This document shows positions 1,081 to 21,706 of a stretch of 64,000 nucleotides of DNA, in pieces. How positions within the stretch are numbered: position 1 is the first letter of the stretch; every line of letters begins with the position of its first letter. The position numbers and the translations under genes are program-made. The DNA is taken from IMG/VR virus record IMGVR_UViG_3300042895_001344, positions 62,001 to 126,000 of that record. One strand, given 5' to 3'. The notes under the pieces were generated by a model, which saw only the letters and a list, made by a program, of their open reading frames with translations, made no database searches and was not told the DNA's origin.

Positions 1081-4000
1081 TTAAAAACCACCTAAATCCA
1101 ATACAATATTATTTTGTTCTTGTGTTATTACGTTTTGTCCTCCCATTGATATTGAAGCAGAGATAATTTGTGATTGAATTTGAGCTTGCATCATTGCCAT
1201 TGCACCTGATATAATAAGTGATTCTCTTAATGGATCAGTTGATGTTAATGTTGTTGTTCCACGTACTGTTAAATCTCCATCAATAATAACTGAACCTGTT
1301 GTACGTAATGAACCTGTAAAATCATGTTTATCATCTAATGTATCACCGAACTTTGTTGACCCTGATTGATAAAGTATTGAAGATGTTACATAATCAATAC
1401 GTAATTCTTTTGCTGTGATTGTACCATCAATTACTACATCTGTATTAACTTTTAATTTTCCATCAGCTAATGATGCACTTACACTACCACTAACAATTCT
1501 ATCTAAGTTAAGTCCTGTAATTCCTGATGATGGGATATTATATAATCCTGCACCATCACCTGTAAATGAACCGCTAATTGTTCCGTTATTTACAGTTAAA
1601 TCACCTGTGTTAATTTCTAAATCACTATTTGTTAAATCAACAAGACCATTGAAAACATGTAAATTAGATCCACTTGTTAAATACAATGATGAACTGTCGG
1701 TCATTATTGTATTACTATCGGTAATTCCTAATTGAGATGTAATATTTAACGATCCCGTTATTTCTACATCATTTGTTGTCGTCCATGTGCCAGGTGTTGT
1801 TTCGGCAAATAAACTATCTCCGCTAGATCCTGATGTTCCACTTGTTCCCGATGTTCCACTTGTTCCTGATGTACCTGCAGTTCCTGATGAACCTGAAGTT
1901 CCGCTTGTTCCAGCCGAACCCGATGAACCACTAGTACCTGATGAACCATTACCACCGACAGTAGCAATTACTGTACCTGTTTGAGCCTCGTTAAAATATA
2001 CTTTTAAGTTATTACTATCAATAACTTCAATCTCTGTTGGGATTACTACTTTATCACTTGCATCAAATACGTTAATTGCAGGATATTTGTATCCTAAATT
2101 GTGATTGAATGACCATGTTGTTGAAGCTGAGGATACATTTAATGTTTTAGTTTGACCTGAAACAATAACTGCGTTTTCTGCATATATCGCGTATGATGAT
2201 GTTCCTGCAAATTGTGATGTATTTGAACCTGTATATGTGTTAAACGCCGATTCATCTAATTTACCGGTACCAATTGCTTGTCCGTTTAATGTTATTGAAC
2301 CTGTTATATTAACTGAACCCGTAAAATTATGTGTATCGTCTAAAGTATCTCCGAATTTGGTGGAACCTGATGTATATAAAACTGAAGAGGTTACATAATC
2401 AATGTGTAATTCTTTCGCGGTCAAAATACCATCAACATATAATGATCCTGTAATTGATGTATTGGTGTTAATATGTAAACCATCTAAATCAATAGATGCT
2501 GTATTACTACCACTACTAATTAAATTTAATTGTAAACCTGTAACTCCTGATGCTGGTATGTTAATTAAATTACTACCATCACCATAAATGTAAGCTCCAC
2601 TTATTATTCCACCGTCAACATATATGTTTGAACCACTCGTCATGTATAATGACGAACTATCTGTCATTATAATATTAGCATCAACAACTCCTAATTGGGA
2701 AGTTATTGATAATGATCCAGTAATTTCTACGTCATTTGTTGTTGCCCAAACGCTACCCGTTAGAGCAAATAAACTATCCCCTGAAGTACCATCCGAACCT
2801 GAAGAACCCGATGTACCTGAAGTACCACTTGTACCTGAAGTTCCGTCTGAACCACTAGTTCCTGAAGTACCACTTGTACCATCAGAACCACTAGATCCTG
2901 AAGTACCACTTGTACCATCGCTACCTGAAGAACCTGATGTACCCGCACTACCACTTGTACCTGACGTACCATCACTACCTGAAGTACCCGCAGTTCCTGA
3001 AGAACCATCTGAACCCGATGTACCCGCAGTTCCTGAAGAACCACTAGTTCCTGATGAACCGTCTGAACCTGAAGTACCACTAGATCCGTTTGATCCTGAT
3101 GAACCACTAGTTCCTGATGAACCATCTGTACCGTCAACACCTGATATACCCGAAGTACCATCACTACCTGAAGAACCGCTAGTACCACTAGATCCGTTCG
3201 AACCTGAAGAACCACTAGTTCCTGATGTACCATCAGAACCACTAGATCCTGAAGTACCTGAAGATCCTGATGTACCATCACTACCACTAGAACCTGAAGA
3301 TCCATCTGAACCACTTGAACCTGAAGATCCTGAAGAACCTGAAGAACCATCCGATCCACTAGATCCTGAAGAACCTGAAGATCCTGATGTACCATCACTA
3401 CCACTAGATCCTGATGAACCTGATGTACCATCACTACCACTTGTTCCGGATGTCATTGCTGAGAAAGAAACTCCGTCTATTGAAAGACTACCACTTACAA
3501 TATTAACTGATCCTGATATAAAAACCGAACCCGTAAACTCGTGTGTGTCGTCCGATGTATTACCAAATTTATTTGAACCTGATGTGTAAAGAACTGATGA
3601 CGTTACATAATTAATATTTAATTGTTTTGCGGTTAATATACCATCAATATACGTGTCTCCATTAACCCTGAATGTTCCATCGGATTGAATAGACGCACTT
3701 ACCGAACCACTTACTATTTGATTTAGTGCTAAATTTGTTACACCACTTGCCGGTATATTATATAATCCCGCACCATCACCAAAGAAAGCTGCAGTAACAA
3801 AACCACCATTTTCAACAATGATATTACTACCACTTGTTAATATAAGTGATGAACTGTCAGTTAAAAATAAACTTGAATCAAATACACCTGAACCGTTGGA
3901 TACTATTAATGAACCCGTAATAGATGTGTTGGTGTTAATATTAAATCCATCTAAACTAACCGAAGCCGTATTACTACCACTTGTAATTTTATTTAATTCT

Positions 4001-6309
4001 AATCCTGTTACACCTGAAGCTGGAATATTATATAATCCCGCACCATCACCAAAGAAGGCGGCAGTAATGTAACCACCATTTTCTATAATGATATTACTAC
4101 CACTATTTAAAACCATTGAACTACTATCAGTCAAATACAAGAAAGAATTAACCGCATTAGTACCTTGACTAACAGTTAATGAACCTGTAATAGATGTATC
4201 AGTATTAATATTAAATCCATCTAAATTAATTGAAGCAGTATTACTACCACTTGTGATTTGATTTAACTGTAAACCTGTTACTCCTGATGCTGGAATATTA
4301 ATTAAGTTTGAACCGTCTCCGTAGATATAGGCTCCACTTATTATTCCTCCATCTACATATATGTTTGAACCACTAGTAAGATAAAGCGATGAACTATCCG
4401 TCATTATGATATTACTATCTGTAATACCTAATTGAGAAGTTATACTTAAACTACCTGTAATTTCAATATCATTTGTTGTTGCCCATACTGAACCAGTAAG
4501 TGCAAATAAACTATCCCCTGAAGAACCATCTGATCCACTTGAACCTGAAGATCCTGATGTACCATCACTACCACTAGAACCTGAAGAACCATCCGATCCA
4601 CTAGAACCTGAAGATCCTGAAGAACCTGAAGAACCATCTGAACCAGAAGAACCTGATGTACCATCACTACCACTAGAACCTGAAGAACCATCTGATCCAC
4701 TTGAACCTGAAGATCCTGATGTACCATCACTACCACTTGAACCTGAAGAACCATCTGTTCCGTCAATTCCTGATATTCCTGAAGAACCTGAAGAACCATC
4801 TGAACCACTTGTACCGCTAGATCCGTTAGAACCTGATGTACCATCTGAACCACTTGTTCCTGAACTACCATTACTACCACTTGTACCATCGGAACCTGAT
4901 GTTCCTGAAGTCATCGCTGAGAATGAAACTCCGTCTATTATTAAACTACCACTTGAAATATTAACTGAACCACTGATAAACAATGAACCCGTAAACTCGT
5001 GCGTATCATCCGATGTATTACCAAATTTATTTGAACCTGATGTATAAAGAATTGAGGAACTTACATAATCAATATTTAATTGTTTTGCGGTAATAATACC
5101 ATCAACATTTAACGAACCTGTAATCTGTACGTCATTTGTTGTTGCCCAAAAAGATCCTGTTTGTGCAAATAAACTATCTCCTGATGTACCATCAGAACCA
5201 CTTGTACCGCTAGATCCGTTAGAACCTGATGTACCATCAGAACCACTTGTACCTGATGTACCATCTGTTCCGTCAACTCCACTTATACCACTAGAACCTG
5301 AAGAACCGTCTGATCCGTTAGAACCTGATGTACCATCTGAACCACTTGTACCATCAGAACCTGATGTACCATCTGAACCACTAGTTCCACTTGTTCCTGC
5401 GGTTCCCGCTGAACCTGAACCTCCACCACTTGTTTGACCACCAATTAATGAACCTGTGGTATCACTAATCTTAATGTAAATTGGTAGTGGATTTGTTGCC
5501 GGTTTTACATTCGTTACATAAGATGTATTTGATGCAGTTGCATCGTAATATAATATATCACCAATTGAAAATCCTGTTAATGTTAATCCCCCTTTGATTT
5601 CACCAAATGGTTTAACTGCCATGTTTCCATCTTCAGGTTCATTTACTGACGTAACAATACCAAAAGATTTTTCAACTTGAGTTGCGTTTGTTGTGTCAAC
5701 TAATTGAAATGTTCCTGTTGAATCTAAATAAACTATTTGATTAACACTATAACCTGTATTATAAACTAAATTAGTATCGTTATTGTTGTAATATGTTGTT
5801 GTTAAATTTCTATATTGAAATTTTGCATACATGTCATTAACAAAATAGTTAATGTCAGGTAAATAAGGTTGTAACAATTGTAATCCACTTAATATTGGAT
5901 CTCCGTCATCGGATAAATAAAATAATAATCCGTTATTACCTTCGCTAGGGGTATTAAAACCACTAAATGAAGTGTCGGATAATATATTATATAAACCAAC
6001 ATCTTTTAAAACAACATCAATTTCCGTTGCACTTGTTGGTGTTGATGTACTTATAATTTTATAAGATGCGCCGTTACTACTTTGACCAAACCACATTCCT
6101 TCATTTACAAAATATGCATCATACATAAATTGATTTGGTGTAATTCTATCGTCAGAAGTGAGTGTTGCGGTTACTTGTAATGTACAATTAAATGTATATC
6201 CATATCCATGGTAAGTACTTCCAGTATTATTATAAAATGTACTAGTAGTAATACTACCAGGTTTTATATTAGCAACTAATGTAATTGGTAATGATTCTAA
6301 TCTTGCCAT
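1081..6309 (-). CDS. 1742-aa modular fibre protein (Gly-X-Y Ser/Thr tracts, duplicated shaft modules, HNLG domain)
   Basis: Four GSS/GTS tracts; four copies of AK(Q/E)LxIxYVxSSxLYxSGSxKFGxTxDDxHxFTGS; five GDGxxLxNIPxSGxTxL modules; C-terminal DLGGF. Confidence 0.8.
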   Translation of the reverse strand: MARLESLPITLVANIKPGSITTSTFYNNTGSTYHGYGYTFNCTLQVTATLTSDDRITPNQFMYDAYFVNEGMWFGQSSNGASYKIISTSTPTSATEIDVVLKDVGLYNILSDTSFSGFNTPSEGNNGLLFYLSDDGDPILSGLQLLQPYLPDINYFVNDMYAKFQYRNLTTTYYNNNDTNLVYNTGYSVNQIVYLDSTGTFQLVDTTNATQVEKSFGIVTSVNEPEDGNMAVKPFGEIKGGLTLTGFSIGDILYYDATASNTSYVTNVKPATNPLPIYIKISDTTGSLIGGQTSGGGSGSAGTAGTSGTSGSDGTSGSDGTSGSDGTSGSNGSDGSSGSSGISGVDGTDGTSGTSGSDGTSGSNGSSGTSGSDGTSGDSLFAQTGSFWATTNDVQITGSLNVDGIITAKQLNIDYVSSSILYTSGSNKFGNTSDDTHEFTGSLFISGSVNISSGSLIIDGVSFSAMTSGTSGSDGTSGSNGSSGTSGSDGTSGSNGSSGTSGSDGSSGSSGISGIDGTDGSSGSSGSDGTSGSSGSSGSDGSSGSSGSDGTSGSSGSDGSSGSSGSSGSSGSDGSSGSSGSDGTSGSSGSSGSDGSSGDSLFALTGSVWATTNDIEITGSLSITSQLGITDSNIIMTDSSSLYLTSGSNIYVDGGIISGAYIYGDGSNLINIPASGVTGLQLNQITSGSNTASINLDGFNINTDTSITGSLTVSQGTNAVNSFLYLTDSSSMVLNSGSNIIIENGGYITAAFFGDGAGLYNIPASGVTGLELNKITSGSNTASVSLDGFNINTNTSITGSLIVSNGSGVFDSSLFLTDSSSLILTSGSNIIVENGGFVTAAFFGDGAGLYNIPASGVTNLALNQIVSGSVSASIQSDGTFRVNGDTYIDGILTAKQLNINYVTSSVLYTSGSNKFGNTSDDTHEFTGSVFISGSVNIVSGSLSIDGVSFSAMTSGTSGSDGTSGSSGSSGSDGTSGSSGSSGSSGSDGSSGSSGSSGSSGSDGSSGSSGSDGTSGSSGTSGSSGSDGTSGTSGSSGSNGSSGTSGSSGSDGTSGISGVDGTDGSSGTSGSSGSNGSSGTSGSDGSSGTSGSSGTAGTSGSDGSSGTAGTSGSDGTSGTSGSAGTSGSSGSDGTSGTSGSSGSDGTSGTSGTSGSDGTSGTSGTSGTSGSSGSDGTSGDSLFALTGSVWATTNDVEITGSLSITSQLGVVDANIIMTDSSSLYMTSGSNIYVDGGIISGAYIYGDGSNLINIPASGVTGLQLNLISSGSNTASIDLDGLHINTNTSITGSLYVDGILTAKELHIDYVTSSVLYTSGSTKFGDTLDDTHNFTGSVNITGSITLNGQAIGTGKLDESAFNTYTGSNTSQFAGTSSYAIYAENAVIVSGQTKTLNVSSASTTWSFNHNLGYKYPAINVFDASDKVVIPTEIEVIDSNNLKVYFNEAQTGTVIATVGGNGSSGTSGSSGSAGTSGTSGSSGTAGTSGTSGTSGTSGTSGSSGDSLFAETTPGTWTTTNDVEITGSLNITSQLGITDSNTIMTDSSSLYLTSGSNLHVFNGLVDLTNSDLEINTGDLTVNNGTISGSFTGDGAGLYNIPSSGITGLNLDRIVSGSVSASLADGKLKVNTDVVIDGTITAKELRIDYVTSSILYQSGSTKFGDTLDDKHDFTGSLRTTGSVIIDGDLTVRGTTTLTSTDPLRESLIISGAMAMMQAQIQSQIISASISMGGQNVITQEQNNIVLDLGGF
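2780..3450 (-). repeat. Longest Gly-X-Y (GSS/GTS/GSD) coding repeat tract, ~220 aa
   Basis: Glycine at every third residue; similar tracts at ~1820-1950, 4518-4910, 5180-5430, 6715-7150, 7560-7860. Confidence 0.9.
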
Positions 6310-6311
6310 TT

Positions 6312-8012
6312 TTATATATAAATATTATTTGTAGGTACTTGCCATGTTATGTATTGTACTACCGCACCCGTACCATATATACCAGTAAATCCTGTTCCTA
6401 ATGCCTTAAATGTCATTAAGGTTTTTGCTGCGTTTTGTACACAGACTGATTGGCCAGTTGATGTTCCTCCCATATTTCTACTTAAGAAATCTCCACCAAT
6501 AAGTTGTGAATGTGTCATAAAATTTATTCCCCATAGTCCTAATGGATGTGTTACACTTATTTCAGTTGCACTAACTCTTGTAAATGTCCAACCACCAGTA
6601 CCTGATGTTATAGTATTACCTAGTGGGTCGGTTGCCGCAGCAAAAGGACTCGCATCTAAACTACCTGCCGAATATGTTAATTTTAAAACATACACACCTC
6701 CACCACCCGCCGCCGATGTACCTGAAGAACCTGATGTACCCGATGTTCCCGTTGCACCACTTGTACCTGATGAACCCGCAGCACCTGAAGTACCACTAGA
6801 ACCATCAACACCTGATGTTCCCGATGATCCAGCAATACCTGAAGATCCACTAGATCCTGAAGTTCCCGAAGAACCTGTCGTTCCTGAACTACCATCTGAA
6901 CCACTTGTTCCTGAGGTACCCGATGAAAAACCTAAAGGTGATGTACCCGATGAACCTGAAGTTCCCGCACTACCTGATGTACCGTGTGAACCAGTTGCAC
7001 CCGTTGTACCCGATGTTCCACTTGAACCTGACGTTCCTGAAGTACCACTAGTTCCTGAAGTTCCGTCTGAACCTGATGTTCCACCACTTCCCGCAATACC
7101 TGATGTTCCACTTGATCCTGAAGAACCTGATGTACCACTTGTACCATTTGTACCTCCACCACCGCCACCAACTATAGTCACTCTAACATTACCCGCACCA
7201 ATATCTGTAACGGTTGCACCACTAAATATGATTTTATCTACTCCATTAATTAATGTTGATCCGTCACCGACTTTAAGTGTTGATGTTCCTCCTCCTTCTC
7301 CTCCACTTATTGAACTATATAAATTAATGGACCAACTATTGTGATCACTACCTCCTACATGTTCTAAAATTCTTATTATTAATTGTGTACCTGAATAACT
7401 TACAACACGTCCTATTAAATAATTTAATATATTACTTGCAGCAATTACAAGTTGACCCGTGGTATAAGATAAATTACTATCAACTGTGAAAGTAAGGTCT
7501 TCCCCATCGTGTTCGTCAATATCTGTAATGTATGTTGTTGATGATGTTTGATAAACATTTCCTGAAGTGCCTGATGTACCTGAAGTACCTCTTGCTCCCG
7601 ATGTACCCGAAGAACCACTTGTACCGTGATTACCCGCAATACCGCTTGTTCCTGAAGAACCACTAGATCCGTTTGATCCTGACGTTCCACTTATACCTGA
7701 AGATCCTGATGTTCCCGAAGTTCCTGAAGAACCTGTTAAACCTGAAGAACCACTTGTACCAGATGTACCACTAGTACCTCTTGCACCTGAAGATCCTGAA
7801 GATCCTGAAGATCCTGAAGTACCTGACAAACCTGAAGAACCTGATGTACCTGAAGATCCTGTGGTTAAATCAGTTAAACTTGTTCCTGAAACATATAAAT
7901 TATCTGCGTAGACCGCATTTAATGGAGTTGTGGATGAACCGAGATCAATTGTGGTACCTGGTGTGACGTTTTCCGTCTCAATCTGTGTCCAATTTATTCT
8001 TTGTAGTGCCAT
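6312..8012 (-). CDS. 566-aa fibre-like protein with two Gly-X-Y Ser/Thr tracts and a C-terminal globular (putative receptor-binding) domain
   Basis: GTSGSS tracts; beta-rich, Thr-rich flanks; adjacent to other fibre genes. Confidence 0.75.
   Translation of the reverse strand: MALQRINWTQIETENVTPGTTIDLGSSTTPLNAVYADNLYVSGTSLTDLTTGSSGTSGSSGLSGTSGSSGSSGSSGARGTSGTSGTSGSSGLTGSSGTSGTSGSSGISGTSGSNGSSGSSGTSGIAGNHGTSGSSGTSGARGTSGTSGTSGNVYQTSSTTYITDIDEHDGEDLTFTVDSNLSYTTGQLVIAASNILNYLIGRVVSYSGTQLIIRILEHVGGSDHNSWSINLYSSISGGEGGGTSTLKVGDGSTLINGVDKIIFSGATVTDIGAGNVRVTIVGGGGGGTNGTSGTSGSSGSSGTSGIAGSGGTSGSDGTSGTSGTSGTSGSSGTSGTTGATGSHGTSGSAGTSGSSGTSPLGFSSGTSGTSGSDGSSGTTGSSGTSGSSGSSGIAGSSGTSGVDGSSGTSGAAGSSGTSGATGTSGTSGSSGTSAAGGGGVYVLKLTYSAGSLDASPFAAATDPLGNTITSGTGGWTFTRVSATEISVTHPLGLWGINFMTHSQLIGGDFLSRNMGGTSTGQSVCVQNAAKTLMTFKALGTGFTGIYGTGAVVQYITWQVPTNNIYI
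6317..6324 (-). promoter_or_regulatory. TATTTATA candidate late promoter embedded in the last codons of the upstream gene
   Basis: 7 nt before ATG 6309. Confidence 0.5.
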
Positions 8013-8061: not shown

Positions 8062-8091
8062 AAAAAAAAGGGTTTCAAACCCTTTTTTTTT
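8062..8091. terminator. Intrinsic (bidirectional-looking) terminator
   Basis: AAAAAAAAGGGTTTCAAACCCTTTTTTTT inverted repeat right after the glutaredoxin stop. Confidence 0.8.
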
Positions 8092-16499: not shown

Positions 16500-17024
16500 T
16501 TAGTTAGTTTTTCTCTCTTGTATTAATGGATTCATTGCAGTTTCAAATGTTTCTTGAAACTTAGCTAATTTTTCTAATTCATTTGCAACGTCTTGTTCCA
16601 ATTTTAACATATCAGCATTGATATATGCTCCTGACTCTTTACCCGCAATAAAAACAAAACTAATGTCTTGATCAGTTAATGAACCATCTAATCTAACTTG
16701 ATCGGGAGCAATTGTAATACCAGGAGTAAAGTCGGCAATTTGTGAAACTTGTTGTTTAAAATTATCAATTAACTGAGATATAGCTGTTTTTTCACTATCT
16801 TGTAATGTTAAGTCCGCCTCATCTGAAGAATTCATTTTAATTTCAACATCATTTACTACCATGACGTCATTCTTAAGATTTTCTTCGGATTTATCCACCT
16901 CAGGTGATTGGAATCCAACTGCCTCGTTTAATGTTCTATTTGATGCCTTTGATTCTGTTATAGTCCTAATGGTCTTTAACATACCTTTCATTACATCGTA
17001 ATCATTTTTAGTTTTCATTTGCAT
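16500..17024 (-). CDS. Hypothetical protein
   Basis: Likely start MQMKTK at 17024 (or 17018); TATTTATA at 17067-17074. Confidence 0.7.
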   Translation of the reverse strand: MQMKTKNDYDVMKGMLKTIRTITESKASNRTLNEAVGFQSPEVDKSEENLKNDVMVVNDVEIKMNSSDEADLTLQDSEKTAISQLIDNFKQQVSQIADFTPGITIAPDQVRLDGSLTDQDISFVFIAGKESGAYINADMLKLEQDVANELEKLAKFQETFETAMNPLIQERKTN

Positions 17025-17610
17025 TGTTAAAAAAAACCCCAAAGTTAAAGGAAGGGTTTATATCTGTATAAATACTTGAAAAATTGGATTTACATACTAT
17101 CCCTGTGAAATTTGAAGCATTTTCCAAGTATCCGTGGGATGGTACCACTTGTTTAGTTATTTTATGTTTATCACACAACTCATTACAAAGTTCAGAAAGG
17201 GATTTTAATTGGGTTTCGGAGTATACGTCCCAAAAATAATAGTTCCTCCAATTACGGATATGTGGTTCACCTCTGTATGGGTCTCCAATCCAATTATAAA
17301 GGACACCAGTGATGGTATCTTTGTTCAACCATCCTAAGTTCTCGACGGCTATTTTGATCTGTTTTTTGTCTATCTGAGGGTCATTAAATGTATTGGAACT
17401 ATGGTCGGTATCAAACAGTTGATAAACTACACCTAATTTAGATATAACATAATGAGGGACATCTTCATATTTCCCATTTAGACGATATTTCATTTTACTT
17501 AAAAAATCATCTAATCTTCTTTGGGTGTCGTATAGGAATATTTGCGTCTTCTTAGACTTTCTACGAGTAATATTTAAATTATCTAAAATTTCTACGTCTT
17601 GAACTAACAT
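17008..17610 (-). CDS. N-acetylmuramoyl-L-alanine amidase (Amidase_2)-like protein, Zn ligands degenerate
   Basis: PHYVISKLGVVYQL, IAVENLG, YSETQLKSLSELCNELC, TDINP; HxT replaced by YDT and GH by CK. Confidence 0.65.
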   Translation of the reverse strand: MLVQDVEILDNLNITRRKSKKTQIFLYDTQRRLDDFLSKMKYRLNGKYEDVPHYVISKLGVVYQLFDTDHSSNTFNDPQIDKKQIKIAVENLGWLNKDTITGVLYNWIGDPYRGEPHIRNWRNYYFWDVYSETQLKSLSELCNELCDKHKITKQVVPSHGYLENASNFTGIVCKSNFSSIYTDINPSFNFGVFFNNANEN

Positions 17611-17866
17611 TTCTCGATATAACTTTTTCTCCTTGTGGTAGTGTGTTTATTTCTTCTTCGGACGTTGGTATGATTGTTTTATTATTTTCCAAATCATATA
17701 TTACTTGATTTGGGTTAGTATCATCAGATTCCCAATATAAAGTCTCCTCTTTAGAATCTGTTAATTCTAACGTTTGGATTTGCTCTTGGGGGAGTGTATT
17801 TTCTATTGTTAACGAAACCAAGTCCACCTTCAATTCCTCCAATGTCGGAGTTAGGGACTCTTCTAA
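17579..17866 (-). CDS. Acidic ORF lacking an ATG start, probably the -1 frameshift extension of 17863-19011
   Basis: Open from the A10 run (LEESLTPTLEELKVD...) to the stop at 17579. Confidence 0.55.
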   Translation of the reverse strand, partial: LEESLTPTLEELKVDLVSLTIENTLPQEQIQTLELTDSKEETLYWESDDTNPNQVIYDLENNKTIIPTSEEEINTLPQGEKVISRNVSSRRRNFR

Positions 17867-17876
17867 TTTTTTTTTT
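17820..17876 (-). promoter_or_regulatory. Candidate -1 frameshift signal (A10 slippery run plus downstream stem-loop)
   Basis: GAT GAA AAA AAA AAT TAG AA GAGTCC...CTCCG-ACAT-TGGAG...GGACTT. Confidence 0.6.
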
Positions 17877-19011
17877 CATCATCTTGTTCGGATGATGTGG
17901 TTTCTTTGTTTTCGTAATGTAATCCTTCGTTCCCGTTCTGACCTATAATATCCATTCGTTCATTGTCCTCATCTATTTTTAACTCCACGACTTCCTCAGG
18001 TGTTGCAAATGGTTCAGGAACAAAACCATCAAATTCTTGTTCGGAAACTTCCAAATCCTCTTGAACTAAAATATCAAATTCAAGTGTTTCGTTATCTTGG
18101 AAAATATTCTCCGTTTCGGGTTCTATAGTGGAAAAATTTCTTTGAACTTCTTCTTCAGTGGGTTCTTCTTGTAAAATATTCTCAATTTCTTCTTCCGTAA
18201 AGAAAGGTTCTTCGTCTTCTAAACCATCCATTAATGTTTCATCCCAATCAGATACTTCATCATCCAAATCTTCTTTAATCATTGGGTTATCAAGTGGTTC
18301 ATCATATAAACCCATCTCTTCGTCGTTCTTCATTATCTCTGCCAATAATTCTCCTCTTCTTTTATATTCTTCCTCCGCTTTCTTTAATTCTTCATTTGGT
18401 GGAGGTGGATTTAATAATACCTCTTCCAATTTTTTTAAATCATCTTCACTTAAATTTAATCTTACAGACTCATCAATAAAGTTTTTTAAATCTTCGGGGT
18501 TAGATTCCGATTCTTTAATTGGTGGTGTTTCATTTTCTTTTAATCTATCTTCTTCCGTAAATTTAACTAACATATGAAGAAAGGATAATGAAATGATTGG
18601 TAACATACCTCCAGCAAAAAACGCTAAGAATCTTTTATTACCTACTAAGTCAGTTGAATCTACTCCCATTAATTCTGTTAATGGTAATACTAAATCAACC
18701 CAATCCCTAAACGACTGTCCATTGATATCGATATATGTATACGCAAAAAATACATTACCTATAAACTGTATTAACGTCACAACCGCAAATGGGAAATAAA
18801 CTTTCTTACCCATGTTTGCCGAAATGGCCGCTAATGCCGATAATGCCGCAATCTCAATTCCAATTGATAAATAAACAGCCCAACTTACTGGATTGGATAT
18901 ACCATACCATTTTGTTACGTGTGAAATAGAAACAATTGCAACAGTAATGATTGGAATCAAAAATGCCGCAATAATTAATGTTTTAAAATTTTGGTTTAAC
19001 CAATGTTTCAT
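17863..19011 (-). CDS. Multi-pass membrane protein with long acidic tail
   Basis: About four hydrophobic helices in the first 150 aa, then E/D-rich. Confidence 0.8.
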   Translation of the reverse strand: MKHWLNQNFKTLIIAAFLIPIITVAIVSISHVTKWYGISNPVSWAVYLSIGIEIAALSALAAISANMGKKVYFPFAVVTLIQFIGNVFFAYTYIDINGQSFRDWVDLVLPLTELMGVDSTDLVGNKRFLAFFAGGMLPIISLSFLHMLVKFTEEDRLKENETPPIKESESNPEDLKNFIDESVRLNLSEDDLKKLEEVLLNPPPPNEELKKAEEEYKRRGELLAEIMKNDEEMGLYDEPLDNPMIKEDLDDEVSDWDETLMDGLEDEEPFFTEEEIENILQEEPTEEEVQRNFSTIEPETENIFQDNETLEFDILVQEDLEVSEQEFDGFVPEPFATPEEVVELKIDEDNERMDIIGQNGNEGLHYENKETTSSEQDDEKKN

Positions 19012-19301
19012 TTAGATTCTTGTTCTTTTTTTAAGTTTTCTTTAACAATAAAATGTAGTTCCATTAACTGTGGCCCTCTATCTTTTTGTGTGATCCAATT
19101 ATCATAAAAACCGTGAATTGCTATTTTTTCATTTTTATGTGTTGTTTTAAGACTATCAATCGTAGATACGTTTTGTTTTTGAATTTTTTCTAATTTAGTC
19201 ACTCTACTTGAATTGCTACAAGACTTAAAAAAGAAGATGACTGTTAAAAAAATCAGTACCTGTAATTTATATGTTTTTATTAATTCGATTAACTTTTTCA
19301 T
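19008..19301 (-). CDS. Membrane-anchored/lipoprotein-like protein
   Basis: N-terminal TM followed by FKSCSN; TATTTATA at 19315-19322. Confidence 0.65.
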   Translation of the reverse strand: MKKLIELIKTYKLQVLIFLTVIFFFKSCSNSSRVTKLEKIQKQNVSTIDSLKTTHKNEKIAIHGFYDNWITQKDRGPQLMELHFIVKENLKKEQESK

Positions 19302-19313
19302 AATATTATATTT

Positions 19314-20123
19314 TTATAAATAGTTTAATAGACCAAAACTCTCGTTTCTAAGCTTTTTAATGGCCTTATCACGTAATTGTCTAATACGTTCTTTTGTACA
19401 ACCGTATTCCTCCCCCAAGTCCTCTAAGTTTGATTCAACACCTGTTAGACCATAATATCTCTCAATAATAACTCTTTCTCTTTCATCTAAGACACTTAAC
19501 ATTGCTGAAACTTTTTTCTTTATTTCTTCAGGTGAGTTCATAATAGCATCAGGTCTTTCCGCTTCTTTGTTTGGAATAATATCAATTAGTTGATCTCCGT
19601 CTTCGTTTATTTCTCTATATAGACCAACACAGTATGGTAGACCACTTGACACCGGTTCTTCACTATTATTAATAAAGAAATTATCTTCTTGACTTAATTC
19701 TTCTTTTTTAGATTTCTGTGATTCTTGAACCAAATTTGACGGAAGACGTATAGTTCTTGCGTTTTCATTTAATGATGCCATTATTGATTGTCTAACCCAC
19801 CACACAGCGTATGATATAAATTTTAATCCACTTGTTGGATCAAATCTTTCCGCCGCCTTCATTAAACCAATATTACCTTCGGATATGATGTCCATAATAT
19901 CCATCCCTTGATTTTGAAACATTTTTGCAACTGATATAACAAATCTTAAATTACCTACAACCAACTCATCGTATAAAAATTTCTTTTCATGTTTAGTAAT
20001 TGTCTTATCATTAAGTCTTTCAAAAATAACCTCTTGTCTTTCATGTGATATAACAGGTATTCTACGAATGTCCTTTATGTACTGTTGTATTTCCTCGGTG
20101 TTGTTTAAGATGGATTTTTTCAT
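19314..20123 (-). CDS. RNA polymerase sigma-70 family factor (Bacteroidota RpoD-like)
   Basis: NLRFVISVAK, EGNIGLMKAAERFD, KFISYAVWWVRQ, region-4 HTH TKERIRQLRDKAIKKLR. Confidence 0.93.
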   Translation of the reverse strand: MKKSILNNTEEIQQYIKDIRRIPVISHERQEVIFERLNDKTITKHEKKFLYDELVVGNLRFVISVAKMFQNQGMDIMDIISEGNIGLMKAAERFDPTSGLKFISYAVWWVRQSIMASLNENARTIRLPSNLVQESQKSKKEELSQEDNFFINNSEEPVSSGLPYCVGLYREINEDGDQLIDIIPNKEAERPDAIMNSPEEIKKKVSAMLSVLDERERVIIERYYGLTGVESNLEDLGEEYGCTKERIRQLRDKAIKKLRNESFGLLNYL

Positions 20124-20630: not shown

Positions 20631-21278
20631 TTATTTCTTACGATTTACGTTCCAATAAACACCTCCACCAATAAACGGAACTAATTGACCACTAGTTCCA
20701 TCAGGCCCTACTTTATTTGATACTCCAATACCAATCTTATATAAATGTTTAGCATCTTTATCTTTTATAATAAAACCTAAACCAATAAGATTGATAACAT
20801 TTGGTTTATCTAACTTAGCATCAATACCAAAATAATATAAATTTTTTCTTGCGTCCCCTAAGAATGTTGTATCTCTAACTACTTTTTGTTTGATATCGCT
20901 TTTAAATGAACGACCTAACACCCTACCATTTGATATGGTATCAAACACAGTTACGGTTCCAACGTTGTTTGGTAATTTAAGAATGTCTTTCTTAAACATT
21001 TTCATTCCGATTGAATTTAAAATTGCATTGGTATCAATTGGGTTAGTTACTGTAAAAGTATCATGAACCGCATATGGAATTTGTACTTCCACAGGTATTT
21101 CTACTTCAATGGGAACTTCAATACCAACTGTATCATGAACGGGAACTTCATATCCCACCGTATCATGTATAGTAATCGTTCTATGTGGCATAATACCTTT
21201 TGGGTTTACGAATTCCACAATAGCCACACCAATCAATAATACAATTATTATATTTCTAATGTCTAAGATGTGTTTCAT
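20631..21278 (-). CDS. Membrane-anchored exported protein with HDT/EVP repeats and beta-rich C-terminus
   Basis: N-terminal TM; C-terminal FIGGGVYW beta strand. Confidence 0.7.
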   Translation of the reverse strand: MKHILDIRNIIIVLLIGVAIVEFVNPKGIMPHRTITIHDTVGYEVPVHDTVGIEVPIEVEIPVEVQIPYAVHDTFTVTNPIDTNAILNSIGMKMFKKDILKLPNNVGTVTVFDTISNGRVLGRSFKSDIKQKVVRDTTFLGDARKNLYYFGIDAKLDKPNVINLIGLGFIIKDKDAKHLYKIGIGVSNKVGPDGTSGQLVPFIGGGVYWNVNRKK

Positions 21279-21280
21279 AT

Positions 21281-21706
21281 TTATTTAAGAAGATATAAAG
21301 ATGTCATAATTATTCCAGCAAAAGATCCAACCTTATAAAGGAATGTTTTTCTTCTTTGTCCTTTTAATTCTTTTAATAGACTTTCAGATTTTTGTCTTTC
21401 TAATCCAAATTGTTCATCTTTCTTATTGATAATCACCTCTAAATTAGAAATTTTTTGGTCTTTTAATGTATCTTTTTGTTTAAATAAATTAATTTGTTGG
21501 TCTTTTAAACCAATGACATTATTTAATTCAACAATCTCTAATTTTGTACCATCATAACGAATTAAGTCTTGGTAAACTAATCTAGCGACTTTTGTTGATA
21601 TGGTAACTTTAGTAGTGTCTAATACAATAACTTTAGTTGTATCTGTTTGTGAATAACTGCTCAAGCTCAAGATTACCAATAGTAGTAATAGCGTTAACTT
21701 TTTCAT
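21281..21706 (-). CDS. Secreted coiled-coil protein with C-terminal TM (spanin-like candidate)
   Basis: Signal peptide MKKLTLLLLLVILSLSSYS/Q; heptad repeats. Confidence 0.65.
   Translation of the reverse strand: MKKLTLLLLLVILSLSSYSQTDTTKVIVLDTTKVTISTKVARLVYQDLIRYDGTKLEIVELNNVIGLKDQQINLFKQKDTLKDQKISNLEVIINKKDEQFGLERQKSESLLKELKGQRRKTFLYKVGSFAGIIMTSLYLLK

What the first reader, a model, noticed from the sequence alone, without database searches (positions are those of the whole stretch)
17579..17880. Programmed -1 frameshift (or transcriptional slippage) signal extending a membrane protein next to the amidase
Seen: the 382-aa membrane ORF ends GAT GAA AAA AAA AAT TAG on an A10 run (17867-17876). 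The -1 frame is open from there (LEESLTPTLEELKVD...) for 95 codons to 17579 and has no ATG start. Five nt after the A-AAA-AAT heptamer, an unusually GC-rich segment folds: outer stem GAGTCC/GGACTT enclosing the hairpin CTCCG-ACAT-TGGAG. Known: heptamer + 5-9 nt spacer + stem-loop is the canonical -1 PRF layout. In phages it is best known from tail assembly chaperones, not membrane proteins. Inference: two isoforms (~382 and ~476 aa) of a multi-TM protein with an acidic tail, made at a fixed ratio in a probable lysis/envelope module.
Basis: partly seen in the sequence, partly recalled or inferred. Interest (0 to 1): 0.75.

Follow-up and report, generated by a model that had tools for sequence, protein, structure and literature searches.

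The report
Conserved A-run recoding site in phage

Summary
The A10 run (17867-17876), the TAG stop and the 95-codon open -1 frame are all present as described.

**The site is real and conserved.**
- Of 100 usable related loci, 84 have the same interruption, 13 encode the long form in frame, and 3 lack a run.
- All 61 distinct interrupted contexts need the -1 frame, which equals one extra A.
- The run is A10 in 51 contexts, A11 in 5 and A9 in 5.
- The two frames often overlap by only 10-16 nt, which is the run itself.
- The extension is under purifying selection.
- The in-frame loci still keep an A10 run.
- A complete 335-kb relative has no other A10 inside a gene.

**The downstream stem is not a stimulator.** It is no more stable than shuffled sequence (z +0.19) and is not conserved.

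**A hairpin abuts the run on its 5' side.** It lies at window 17877-17897. It recurs in 41 of 61 contexts with unrelated stem sequences, compensatory changes and sense-strand G.U pairs.

**Most likely mechanism.** This layout fits hairpin-assisted transcriptional slippage giving a short 382-aa and a long 477-aa isoform. Ribosomal slippage on the A run is not excluded, because no RNA data covered the run.

**Function is unknown.** The extension ends inside the start of the neighbouring amidase gene, which suggests coupled expression.

The parts
17863..19011 (-). Zero-frame ORF encoding the short isoform (382 aa, P0001). It ends DDEKKN followed by TAG.
   Evidence: 118 of the 120 best homologues end at the same K run.
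18532..19011 (-). N-terminal membrane domain (aa 1-160) with four predicted transmembrane helices and a DUF2637-like predicted fold.
   Evidence: - Hydropathy segments.
- AlphaFold model with pLDDT 82 and pTM 0.74.
- Foldseek hits to DUF2637 models with TM 0.5-0.59 and weak E-values of 0.06-0.2.
- 647 representatives at 50% clustering with E <= 1e-3.
18361..18486 (-). TacA1-like motif (aa 176-217). Only the C-terminal half of the Pfam profile matches.
   Evidence: Pfam PF08681, E 3.9e-5, 24 bits against a cut-off of 21. The motif is also found in P0030, L012 and L031.
17877..17897 (-). Hairpin CATCATC-CGAACAA-GATGATG, which abuts the A run on its 5' side with 0 nt between them. It is the proposed stimulator acting in the nascent RNA.
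   Evidence: - MFE -6.7 kcal/mol.
- The upstream 24 nt fall in the lowest 5% of own-gene windows in 41 of 61 distinct contexts, with a median percentile of 0.014.
- 13 distinct 3'-arm sequences occur.
- Compensatory changes are seen.
- Allowing sense-strand G.U pairs adds 14 loci, whereas allowing A.C adds 1.
17867..17876 (-). A10 run, the slippage site. It is T10 on the + strand, which is the template strand.
   Evidence: - Sequence read.
- Run length is A10 in 51, A11 in 5 and A9 in 5 distinct shift-requiring contexts.
- The overlap of the two frames is 10-16 nt in many loci.
17863..17865 (-). TAG stop of the zero frame, 1 nt after the run.
   Evidence: In relatives the stop lies 0-16 nt after the run and can be TAG, TAA or TGA. 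This rules out stop-codon reassignment.
17579..17869 (-). The -1 frame extension (P0002). It begins K-LEES, contains LYWESDDTNPNQVIYDLENNKTIIP, ends RNVSSRRRNFR, and stops at TAA 17579-17581. It is the C-terminal part of the 477-aa long isoform.
   Evidence: - Translation.
- The frame is open for 50 or more codons in 77 loci.
- Motifs are conserved.
- dN/dS is 0.10-0.47 in 16 of 18 pairs.
- Natural fused forms exist: P0030, L012, L026, L050, L073 and L095.
17820..17860 (-). It is not supported as a functional element.
   Evidence: z = +0.19 against shuffles. It is not conserved. Downstream windows are not enriched for structure.
17008..17610 (-). Amidase_2 gene (200 aa). Its ATG lies inside the RNV codons of the extension, giving a 32-nt overlap at 17579-17610.
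   Evidence: - Pfam 1.8e-7.
- The overlap is 26-35 nt in every locus that carries the RNV tail.
- In two lineages the extension stops about 7 codons before the ATG.
19314..20123 (-). Phage sigma-70 family factor, given as context. It suggests that the host RNA polymerase is used.
   Evidence: Pfam Sigma70_r2 and r4, and PHROG 351 at 7.6e-49. No Pfam RNA polymerase domain was found in the complete relative G001.

Best explanation
This is a programmed recoding site in a jumbo-phage membrane-protein gene.

**Proposed mechanism (inferred)**
- While transcribing the T10 template, RNA polymerase holds an RNA:DNA hybrid made only of rA:dT pairs.
- The nascent RNA slips back one position and one extra A is added.
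- Unslipped A10 mRNA gives the 382-aa short form, which stops 1 nt after the run.
- A11 mRNA reads through into the -1 frame and gives a 477-aa long form. Its extension ends inside the start of the amidase gene.
- The hairpin directly 5' of the run forms in the nascent transcript as the polymerase reaches the end of the run. It tunes the frequency of slippage by shortening or destabilising the hybrid, by pausing the polymerase, or by blocking backtracking.
- The outcome is a fixed ratio of two isoforms. Possibly it also sets a slippage-dependent supply of ribosomes to the overlapping amidase start.

**What is shown**
- The run, the frame relation, the coding extension and the hairpin are all conserved.
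- There is no 3' structure.

**What is inferred**
- That the polymerase slips rather than the ribosome.
- What the hairpin does.
- What the two isoforms do.
For: 1. The run is A9-A11, and A10 in 51 of 61 contexts. This matches the 9-10-bp hybrid and the threshold of 9 or more A/T for efficient bacterial slippage (PMC5009743). A -1 PRF site needs only 7, and A_AAA_AAA is not the shiftiest heptamer in E. coli.
2. All 61 contexts need +1 nt. Single-nucleotide insertions predominate at A/T runs and rise exponentially with run length (PMC5574713).
3. The frame change is confined to the run, since the overlap is 10-16 nt in many loci.
4. A 5'-adjacent hairpin is present.
   - It occurs in 41 of 61 contexts.
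   - Perfect stems of 7 bp or more occur in 18 of 46 contexts against a 3.2% background.
   - Compensatory pairs are present.
   - The stems are specific to the sense strand.
   - This is the layout of the Roseiflexus IS630 slippage stimulator.
   - A stem 4 nt 5' of a -1 site attenuates -1 PRF.
5. There is no excess 3' structure.
6. The phage does not use Shine-Dalgarno sites, with 1 of 53 starts carrying one. Relatives fall in Bacteroidota bins. SD-like stimulators of PRF are therefore unlikely.
7. In-frame lineages arose at least 3 times. They keep A10, they mostly lack the hairpin (2 of 7; MWU p = 0.028), and a shifted frame stops within 0-4 codons at a run in five of the six in-frame lineages examined, as in Thermus dnaX.
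8. The closest proven analogue is C. rodentium tssM1, with A11 plus a stop and two length variants of a membrane protein.
9. A10 is avoided elsewhere in the genome.
Against: - No RNA evidence exists. The four metatranscriptome runs gave no contig across the run, so mRNA heterogeneity is untested.
- Runs of A10-11 also promote ribosomal -1 slippage or sliding (PMC4363877, listed; review).
- GAG is enriched before the run, which creates GAGGA 2-6 nt upstream in 24 of 61 contexts. In an SD-using host this could act as an SD-like stimulator.
- The one characterised hairpin-dependent case yields a 1-nt deletion on a heteropolymeric motif, not an insertion.
- About a third of contexts have no clear hairpin, so it is not essential.
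- The transcribing polymerase is not identified. Divergent phage RNA polymerases would escape Pfam.
- The statistics are not corrected for shared ancestry.
Confidence: 0.55

Rival explanations
1. Ribosomal -1 frameshifting, or ribosome sliding, on the A run (A_AAA_AAA or A_AAA_AAT). The adjacent stop codon or an upstream GAGGA element might stimulate it. The mRNA would be a faithful A10 copy.
For: - An in-phase slippery heptamer is present in every context.
- The -1 direction matches.
- GAG/GAGGA is enriched 2-6 nt upstream: 27 of 61 contexts against 6.6 expected, and GAG is used in 29 of 63 codons near the run against 179 of 1003 elsewhere.
- Ribosomes are known to slip on poly(A).
Against: - No 3' stimulator is conserved.
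- The conserved structure is 5'-adjacent, a position reported to attenuate -1 PRF.
- The phage genes lack SD motifs and the host is probably Bacteroidota.
- The run is held at 9-11 rather than 7.
- The stop lies anywhere from 0 to 16 nt after the run.
- The G's of GAGGA mostly lie in the 3' arm of the hairpin.
Confidence: 0.27
2. Phase variation at the DNA level. The run changes length during phage DNA replication, so the population mixes A10 genomes (short form) with A11 genomes (long form).
For: Natural A11 alleles exist in an otherwise A10 clade (P0030, L034/L035). L030 (A10) and L031 (A11) are near-identical. Long homopolymers are hypermutable.
Against: - Consensus sequences are overwhelmingly in the interrupted state: 118 of 120 homologues and 84 of 100 loci.
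- Flips among close relatives are rare.
- This rival does not explain a conserved sense-strand RNA hairpin with G.U pairs.
- Read-level data were not available, only contigs.
Confidence: 0.1
3. An artefact or a dead gene. Either the run is a homopolymer miscall that splits one ORF, or the gene is a pseudogene whose downstream frame is meaningless.
For: Homopolymers are a classic source of error, and one fused variant exists.
Against: - The same interruption appears in more than 100 independent assemblies from different studies.
- A9, A10 and A11 contexts all need the same frame.
- Other clades with the same run length are in frame.
- The extension has dN/dS below 0.5, is open for 50-107 codons in AT-rich DNA, and carries conserved motifs.
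Confidence: 0.02

Closest known systems
Citrobacter rodentium tssM1 and Yersinia pseudotuberculosis tssM (Gueguen et al. 2014, PMC4256274)
   Same: A membrane-protein gene is interrupted by a stop right after a poly-A run (A11). RNA polymerase adds extra A's, and a short and a full-length variant are both made. The ratio of the two matters for function.
   Different: - That case is a bacterial T6SS gene, not a phage gene.
- No recoding signals (SD-like sequence or mRNA structure) were found near that site, whereas here a 5'-adjacent hairpin is conserved.
- Slippage there was shown by mass spectrometry of cDNA. Here it is inferred.
Thermus thermophilus dnaX (tau/gamma) slippage at a run of nine (review PMC5009743)
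   Same: A homopolymer of about hybrid length yields mRNAs with one or more extra A's and two products. The arrangement resembles the in-frame lineages here, where a shifted frame stops within 0-4 codons of a run in five of the six lineages examined.
   Different: In dnaX the genomic frame encodes the long form. In 61 of 68 contexts here the genomic frame encodes the short form.
Roseiflexus IS630 stem-loop-mediated transcriptional slippage (Penno et al. 2015, as described in PMC5009743)
   Same: A nascent-RNA stem-loop lies immediately 5' of the slippage motif.
   Different: - The motif there is heteropolymeric (T5C5), and slippage is undetectable without the stem.
- The outcome there is a 1-nt deletion.
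- Here the motif is a homopolymer that should slip on its own, the required change is +1 nt (or -2), and a third of the contexts lack the stem.
Shigella mxiE transcriptional slippage (review PMC5009743)
   Same: [quoted passage not shown] Here the extension runs into the amidase start.
   Different: That case is a T3SS regulator. An effect on the downstream gene is only hypothesised here.
Canonical -1 PRF: E. coli dnaX and the phage tail-chaperone G/GT
   Same: Two products share an N-terminus at a fixed ratio, and a slippery A-rich heptamer is present.
   Different: There is no conserved 3' structure, no functional SD context, and the run is much longer than a heptamer. The gene is a membrane protein, not a tail chaperone.

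Membership tests
Programmed transcriptional slippage at a homopolymer (dnaX-Thermus / tssM1 type) | An A or T run of about 9 or more at the junction of the two frames | tested here: met
   A10 at 17867-17876. Run lengths of A9-A11 in all 61 distinct interrupted contexts.
Programmed transcriptional slippage at a homopolymer (dnaX-Thermus / tssM1 type) | The frame transition can occur only within the run | tested here: met
   The overlap of the two open frames is 10-16 nt in many loci. The -1 frame has TGA TGA just before the run in the window, and the zero-frame stop lies 1 nt after it.
Programmed transcriptional slippage at a homopolymer (dnaX-Thermus / tssM1 type) | The trans-frame product is conserved and under purifying selection | tested here: met
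   dN/dS of 0.10-0.47 in 16 of 18 pairs. Conserved motifs. In-frame natural versions exist.
Programmed transcriptional slippage at a homopolymer (dnaX-Thermus / tssM1 type) | The mRNA population varies in run length while the DNA is homogeneous | tested here: inconclusive
   Contigs from four metatranscriptome runs do not cover 17810-17890. No raw reads were available.
Stem-loop-stimulated transcriptional slippage (Roseiflexus IS630 type) | A stable stem-loop immediately 5' of the slippage motif in the nascent RNA | tested here: met
   - Window 17877-17897, with 0 nt spacing.
- 41 of 61 contexts fall in the lowest 5% of own-gene windows.
- Covariation is present.
- The stems are sense-strand specific.
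Stem-loop-stimulated transcriptional slippage (Roseiflexus IS630 type) | A heteropolymeric motif that gives a 1-nt deletion, and slippage that depends on the stem | tested here: not met
   The motif is a homopolymer and the frame requires +1 nt or -2 nt. About a third of contexts lack a stem. Dependence on the stem cannot be tested here.
Canonical -1 programmed ribosomal frameshift | A slippery heptamer X_XXY_YYZ in the zero-frame phase | tested here: met
   GA[A AAA AAA] AAT. The first A sits at codon position 2 in 40 contexts and position 3 in 21, and both give an in-phase A_AAA_AAA.
Canonical -1 programmed ribosomal frameshift | A 3' stem-loop or pseudoknot 5-9 nt downstream that is more stable than chance and is conserved | tested here: not met
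   z = +0.19. Different or absent in relatives. 4 of 61 downstream windows fall in the lowest 5%, p = 0.55.
Canonical -1 programmed ribosomal frameshift | An upstream SD-like stimulator, as in bacterial dnaX or IS elements | tested here: inconclusive
   GAGGA is enriched 2-6 nt upstream. However, the phage genes lack SD motifs (1 of 53), and the spacing is shorter than the 10 nt of dnaX (that spacing is recalled from memory).
Phase-variable contingency locus (DNA slippage) | Frequent ON/OFF differences in run length among close relatives or within populations | tested here: not met
   Only P0030 (L034/L035) and L030 differ from their clades. Variation within a sample could not be tested.
Holin | A small membrane protein (usually under about 220 aa) with at least one TMD and a charged C-terminus, next to the endolysin gene | tested here: inconclusive
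   Four predicted TM helices and an adjacent amidase, but the protein is 382-477 aa with a long acidic region. There is no PHROG or Pfam holin match. Hole formation cannot be tested here.
DUF2637 membrane domain | Sequence or fold membership | tested here: inconclusive
   No Pfam hit. Foldseek against AFDB clusters gives TM 0.5-0.59 and E 0.06-0.2 to several DUF2637 models.
TacA (DUF1778) antitoxin | An N-terminal RHH DNA-binding part plus a C-terminal toxin-binding part | tested here: not met
   Only profile positions 38-79 of 80 match. No RHH part is present, and the protein is a membrane protein.

The most novel reading that the evidence does not exclude
RNA polymerase slippage, tuned by a nascent-RNA hairpin, acts as a gate for lysis.
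- Only slipped transcripts are translated through the roughly 285-nt extension into the overlapping amidase start.
- Endolysin synthesis is therefore coupled to slippage frequency, either by termination-reinitiation or by protecting the transcript from polarity.
- The ratio of short to long membrane isoforms would also be coupled, as a possible holin/antiholin-like pair.

This would be the first conserved homopolymer-plus-hairpin slippage signal. It would also be the first programmed transcriptional slippage described as a regulatory device in dsDNA phages of Bacteroidota.
Probability: 0.15. Interest if true: 0.85.

Novelty: new variant of a known kind. Interest (0 to 1): 0.62.

Why it matters
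Programmed transcriptional slippage is well established, but the 2016 review states that knowledge of signals that stimulate it is very limited. In that review's account of slippage stimulators, the only natural stem-loop-dependent example described is Roseiflexus IS630.

This site adds a large natural data set:
- 61 distinct contexts pair a hybrid-length A run with a covarying 5'-adjacent hairpin.
- Lineages that no longer need the shift tend to lack the hairpin.

That provides a ready-made series of mutants for testing how nascent RNA structure sets slippage rates.

It also has practical consequences. Gene callers split this gene or truncate it in every metagenome examined, so the long isoform is missing from protein databases. 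It also flags a possible link between recoding and endolysin expression in abundant freshwater jumbo phages.

Tried and rejected
**Searches that gave nothing useful**
- Megablast and tblastn against isolate phage records gave no match, or only a 32%-identical N-domain hit in an unannotated huge phage.
- Laying contigs from four lake metatranscriptome runs gave no coverage of the run, so the RNA test failed. Only Logan contigs were on offer, so A10 versus A11 could not be counted in reads.
- Rfam had no family in 17400-18100.
- PHROGs and Pfam gave no function for the membrane protein or the extension.
- The protein atlas returned only viral hypothetical proteins.
- Sequence and fold searches of the PDB found nothing.

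**Tests with no answer**
- Complex prediction of the amidase with the extension scored 0.00, and the extension had pLDDT of about 31. This is no evidence either way.

**Readings rejected**
- Stop-codon reassignment or readthrough. The zero frame hits TAA three codons after the TAG, and relatives use TAG, TAA or TGA.
- A +1-frame product. Its length varies from 1 to 39 codons and it is not conserved.
- The hairpin as a terminator. It is flagged on the + strand, but on the coding strand it is followed by A's, not U's.
- A second recoding site at the other A10 of the relative G001. That run starts in a stop codon, and its alternative frames are short.
Full report
**1. The observation**

On the minus strand, ORF 17863-19011 encodes a 382-aa protein (P0001) that ends GAT GAA AAA AAA AAT TAG. 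The A10 run is at 17867-17876. The -1 frame reads K-LEESLTPTLEELKVD... and stays open to the TAA at 17579-17581 without an ATG. The next gene, 17008-17610, is an Amidase_2 protein. The gene two upstream is a sigma-70 family factor.

The window is part of a 69,970-bp IMG/VR record judged 21% complete, with about 31% G+C and all genes on one strand. It is a jumbo phage from lake water.

It is no more stable than shuffled sequence: -12.3 kcal/mol against a mean of -12.84, z = +0.19.

**2. It is not an error**

Among the 120 best database homologues, 118 end at the K run (DEKKN and similar) and one, P0030 at 477 aa, is fused. P0030 carries A11 in two assemblies.

I fetched 32 viral and 80 metagenome loci.

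| Category | Loci |
|---|---|
| Usable loci | 100 |
| Stop 0-16 nt after an A run, -1 frame open 50 or more codons | 77 |
| Same, but the -1 frame runs to the contig end | 7 |
| Long form encoded in frame, A run kept | 13 |
| No run (two truncated contigs, one distant relative) | 3 |

After removing duplicates there are 61 interrupted contexts: A10 in 51, A11 in 5 and A9 in 5. All 61 need the -1 frame, which means one extra nucleotide. None needs the +1 frame.

The two frames often overlap by only 10-16 nt. In the window the -1 frame reads TGA TGA just before the run, so the shift must occur inside the run.

**3. The extension is coding**

It is open for 53-107 codons in AT-rich DNA. It carries the motif LYWE..NPNQ.IYDL.NN..I.P.SE in most lineages and the tail K....RNV.N[ST][RQ]RR.FR in nearly all. 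Its dN/dS is 0.10-0.47 in 16 of 18 pairs.

The in-frame lineages (L012/L013, L026/L073, L050, L095) show that the fused protein is a real product. On a tree of the N-domain DNA, the in-frame state arises at least three times, nested within interrupted clades.

These in-frame genes still keep an A10 run at the same place. In five of the six in-frame lineages examined, a shifted frame stops within 0-4 codons of a run. L095 is the exception among the long-established lineages, where only a one-A deletion gives an early stop. The run itself is therefore the conserved element.

A complete 335,630-bp relative has just two A10 runs on both strands. The other one begins in a stop codon.

**4. Where the signal is**

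Downstream sequence shows no excess structure. Only 4 of 61 windows fall in the lowest 5% of their own gene's windows (p = 0.55), with a median percentile of 0.66.

Upstream, a hairpin abuts the run. In the window it is CATCATC-CGAACAA-GATGATG at 17877-17897. The evidence for it is as follows.
- The upstream 24 nt fall in the lowest 5% in 41 of 61 contexts, with a median percentile of 0.014.
- Perfect stems of 7 bp or more that end 0-2 nt before the run occur in 18 of 46 contexts, against 3.2% of background positions.
- There are 13 different 3'-arm sequences, for example CAACATTAGT/ACTGATGTTG, CATCTTCT/GGAAGATG and ATCCATTAC/GTAGTGGAT.
- In an ungapped alignment of the window's clade, four of seven pairs show double compensatory changes. 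83.5% of cells pair, against 76.2% in shuffles (0 of 500 shuffles as high) and 12-63% in slid controls.
- Allowing sense-strand G.U pairs adds 14 loci with stems of 6 bp or more. Allowing A.C, which would be G.U on the other strand, adds one. The structure therefore belongs to the sense RNA.
- In-frame contexts mostly lack it (2 of 7; Mann-Whitney p = 0.028).

These statistics are not corrected for shared ancestry.

**5. Mechanism**

The review by Atkins et al. records the following points (PMC5009743).
- Bacterial RNA polymerase slips efficiently in vivo at runs of nine A's or T's.
- The RNA:DNA hybrid is 9-10 bp long.
- Thermus dnaX uses such a run.
- A nascent stem-loop 5'-adjacent to the motif enables slippage in Roseiflexus IS630.
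- A stem 4 nt 5' of a -1 PRF site attenuates -1 frameshifting.
- Knowledge of stimulators of transcriptional realignment is very limited.

Traverse and Ochman found that single-nucleotide insertions predominate at A/T runs and rise exponentially with run length. Gueguen et al. proved slippage at A11 plus a stop in the membrane-protein gene tssM1.

The phage genes lack Shine-Dalgarno motifs: 1 of 53 starts has one, and G is depleted upstream. Relatives sit in MAGs binned as Emticicia, Flavobacteriaceae and Chitinophagaceae. No Pfam RNA polymerase domain was found in the complete relative, and a phage sigma factor lies two genes upstream. Host polymerase is therefore the likely enzyme.

Together these findings favour hairpin-assisted transcriptional slippage.

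The main caveat is an enrichment of GAG before the run, which gives GAGGA 2-6 nt upstream in 24 of 61 contexts. In an SD-using host this could stimulate ribosomal slippage. Here the G's mostly lie in the hairpin's 3' arm. Ribosomal slippage or sliding on A10-11 cannot be excluded without RNA data, which I could not obtain.

**6. Function**

- The N-terminal 160 aa form four predicted membrane helices. The model has pLDDT 82 and resembles DUF2637 models weakly.
- A TacA1-like motif follows, then a hypervariable acidic region, then the run, then the extension.
- ESMFold2 gave the extension pLDDT of about 31, so it is probably disordered. The amidase-extension complex test gave no answer.
- In every locus with the RNV tail, the amidase ATG lies inside the RNV codons (AGA AAT GTT), with a 26-35-nt overlap. 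In two lineages the extension stops about seven codons before the ATG.
- Ribosomes on slipped mRNA are thus delivered to the amidase start, while ribosomes on unslipped mRNA stop about 250 nt upstream.
- Coupling of amidase expression to slippage is a hypothesis, with a precedent in mxiE.
- A holin-like role rests on position only.

**7. Verdict**

This is a genuine, widely conserved recoding site. It is a new variant of programmed transcriptional slippage: a homopolymer with a conserved 5' hairpin, in a dsDNA phage. The mechanism awaits RNA-level proof.

Noticed in passing
window 18361-18486 (-); also L012, L031, P0030: A TacA1-like (PF08681) motif lies in the cytoplasmic part of the membrane protein. 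Only the C-terminal, toxin-binding half of the antitoxin profile matches (E 3.9e-5). This might point to an interaction with a GNAT-type toxin.
   Followed up: partly
L030, L031, L032 (gene from about 2221): These relatives carry a different N-terminal membrane and coiled-coil domain, but the same TacA-like motif, acidic region, A run and extension. This is a domain swap upstream of a conserved recoding cassette. L030 has A10 where its near-identical relatives L031 and L032 have A11.
   Followed up: partly
window 17579-17610 (-) and all related loci: The amidase start codon lies inside the RNV codons of the extension, with a conserved 26-35-nt dual-coding overlap. In L014/L045 and L031/L032 the extension instead stops about 7 codons before the ATG.
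   Followed up: yes
whole window, 53 gene starts: Shine-Dalgarno motifs are virtually absent (1 of 53), and G is depleted at -12 to -5. Relatives of the N-domain occur in MAGs binned as Emticicia, Flavobacteriaceae and Chitinophagaceae. The host is probably in Bacteroidota. One further hit is in a Prochlorococcus single-cell assembly.
   Followed up: partly
7 codons before the run, in 61 contexts: GAG is used instead of GAA for Glu before a GAN codon in 29 of 63 cases, against 179 of 1003 elsewhere (OR 3.9). This gives GAGGA 2-6 nt before the run.
   Followed up: yes
window 1081-6309 and 6312-8012 (-): Two large ORFs of 1742 and 566 aa are full of collagen triple-helix repeats (Pfam 1.4e-62 and 4.5e-30). 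They are probably fibre proteins.
   Followed up: no
L116 (G001:C1:179840-179849): The only other A10 run of the complete 335-kb relative begins in the TAA stop of a 338-codon ORF. It has no hairpin, and its alternative frames are short. It is not a recoding candidate.
   Followed up: yes
window 19008-19301 (-): A 97-aa ORF has a hydrophobic N-terminus ending in Cys that looks like a lipoprotein signal. It overlaps the start of the membrane gene by ATGA. Nearby ORFs have a signal peptide (21281-21706) or an N-terminal TM anchor (20631-21278). This looks like an envelope-related cluster.
   Followed up: no
window 17751-17882 (-): The +1 frame after the run is open for 37 codons in the window's clade. 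It would be read from transcripts lacking one A. Its length is not conserved in other clades (1-39 codons).
   Followed up: partly
window 8068-8091: A G+C-rich hairpin (AAGGGTTTCAAACCCTT) is followed by a T9 run on the + strand, between two minus-strand genes. It looks like a terminator on the non-coding strand or a bidirectional terminator.
   Followed up: no
representatives P0165-P0271: More distant relatives of the N-domain (under about 55% identity) have no K run. They end in other in-frame tails, such as ..KRLSY.K.. or ..ERIG.NK...YKK. The recoding site is therefore a trait of one subfamily.
   Followed up: partly
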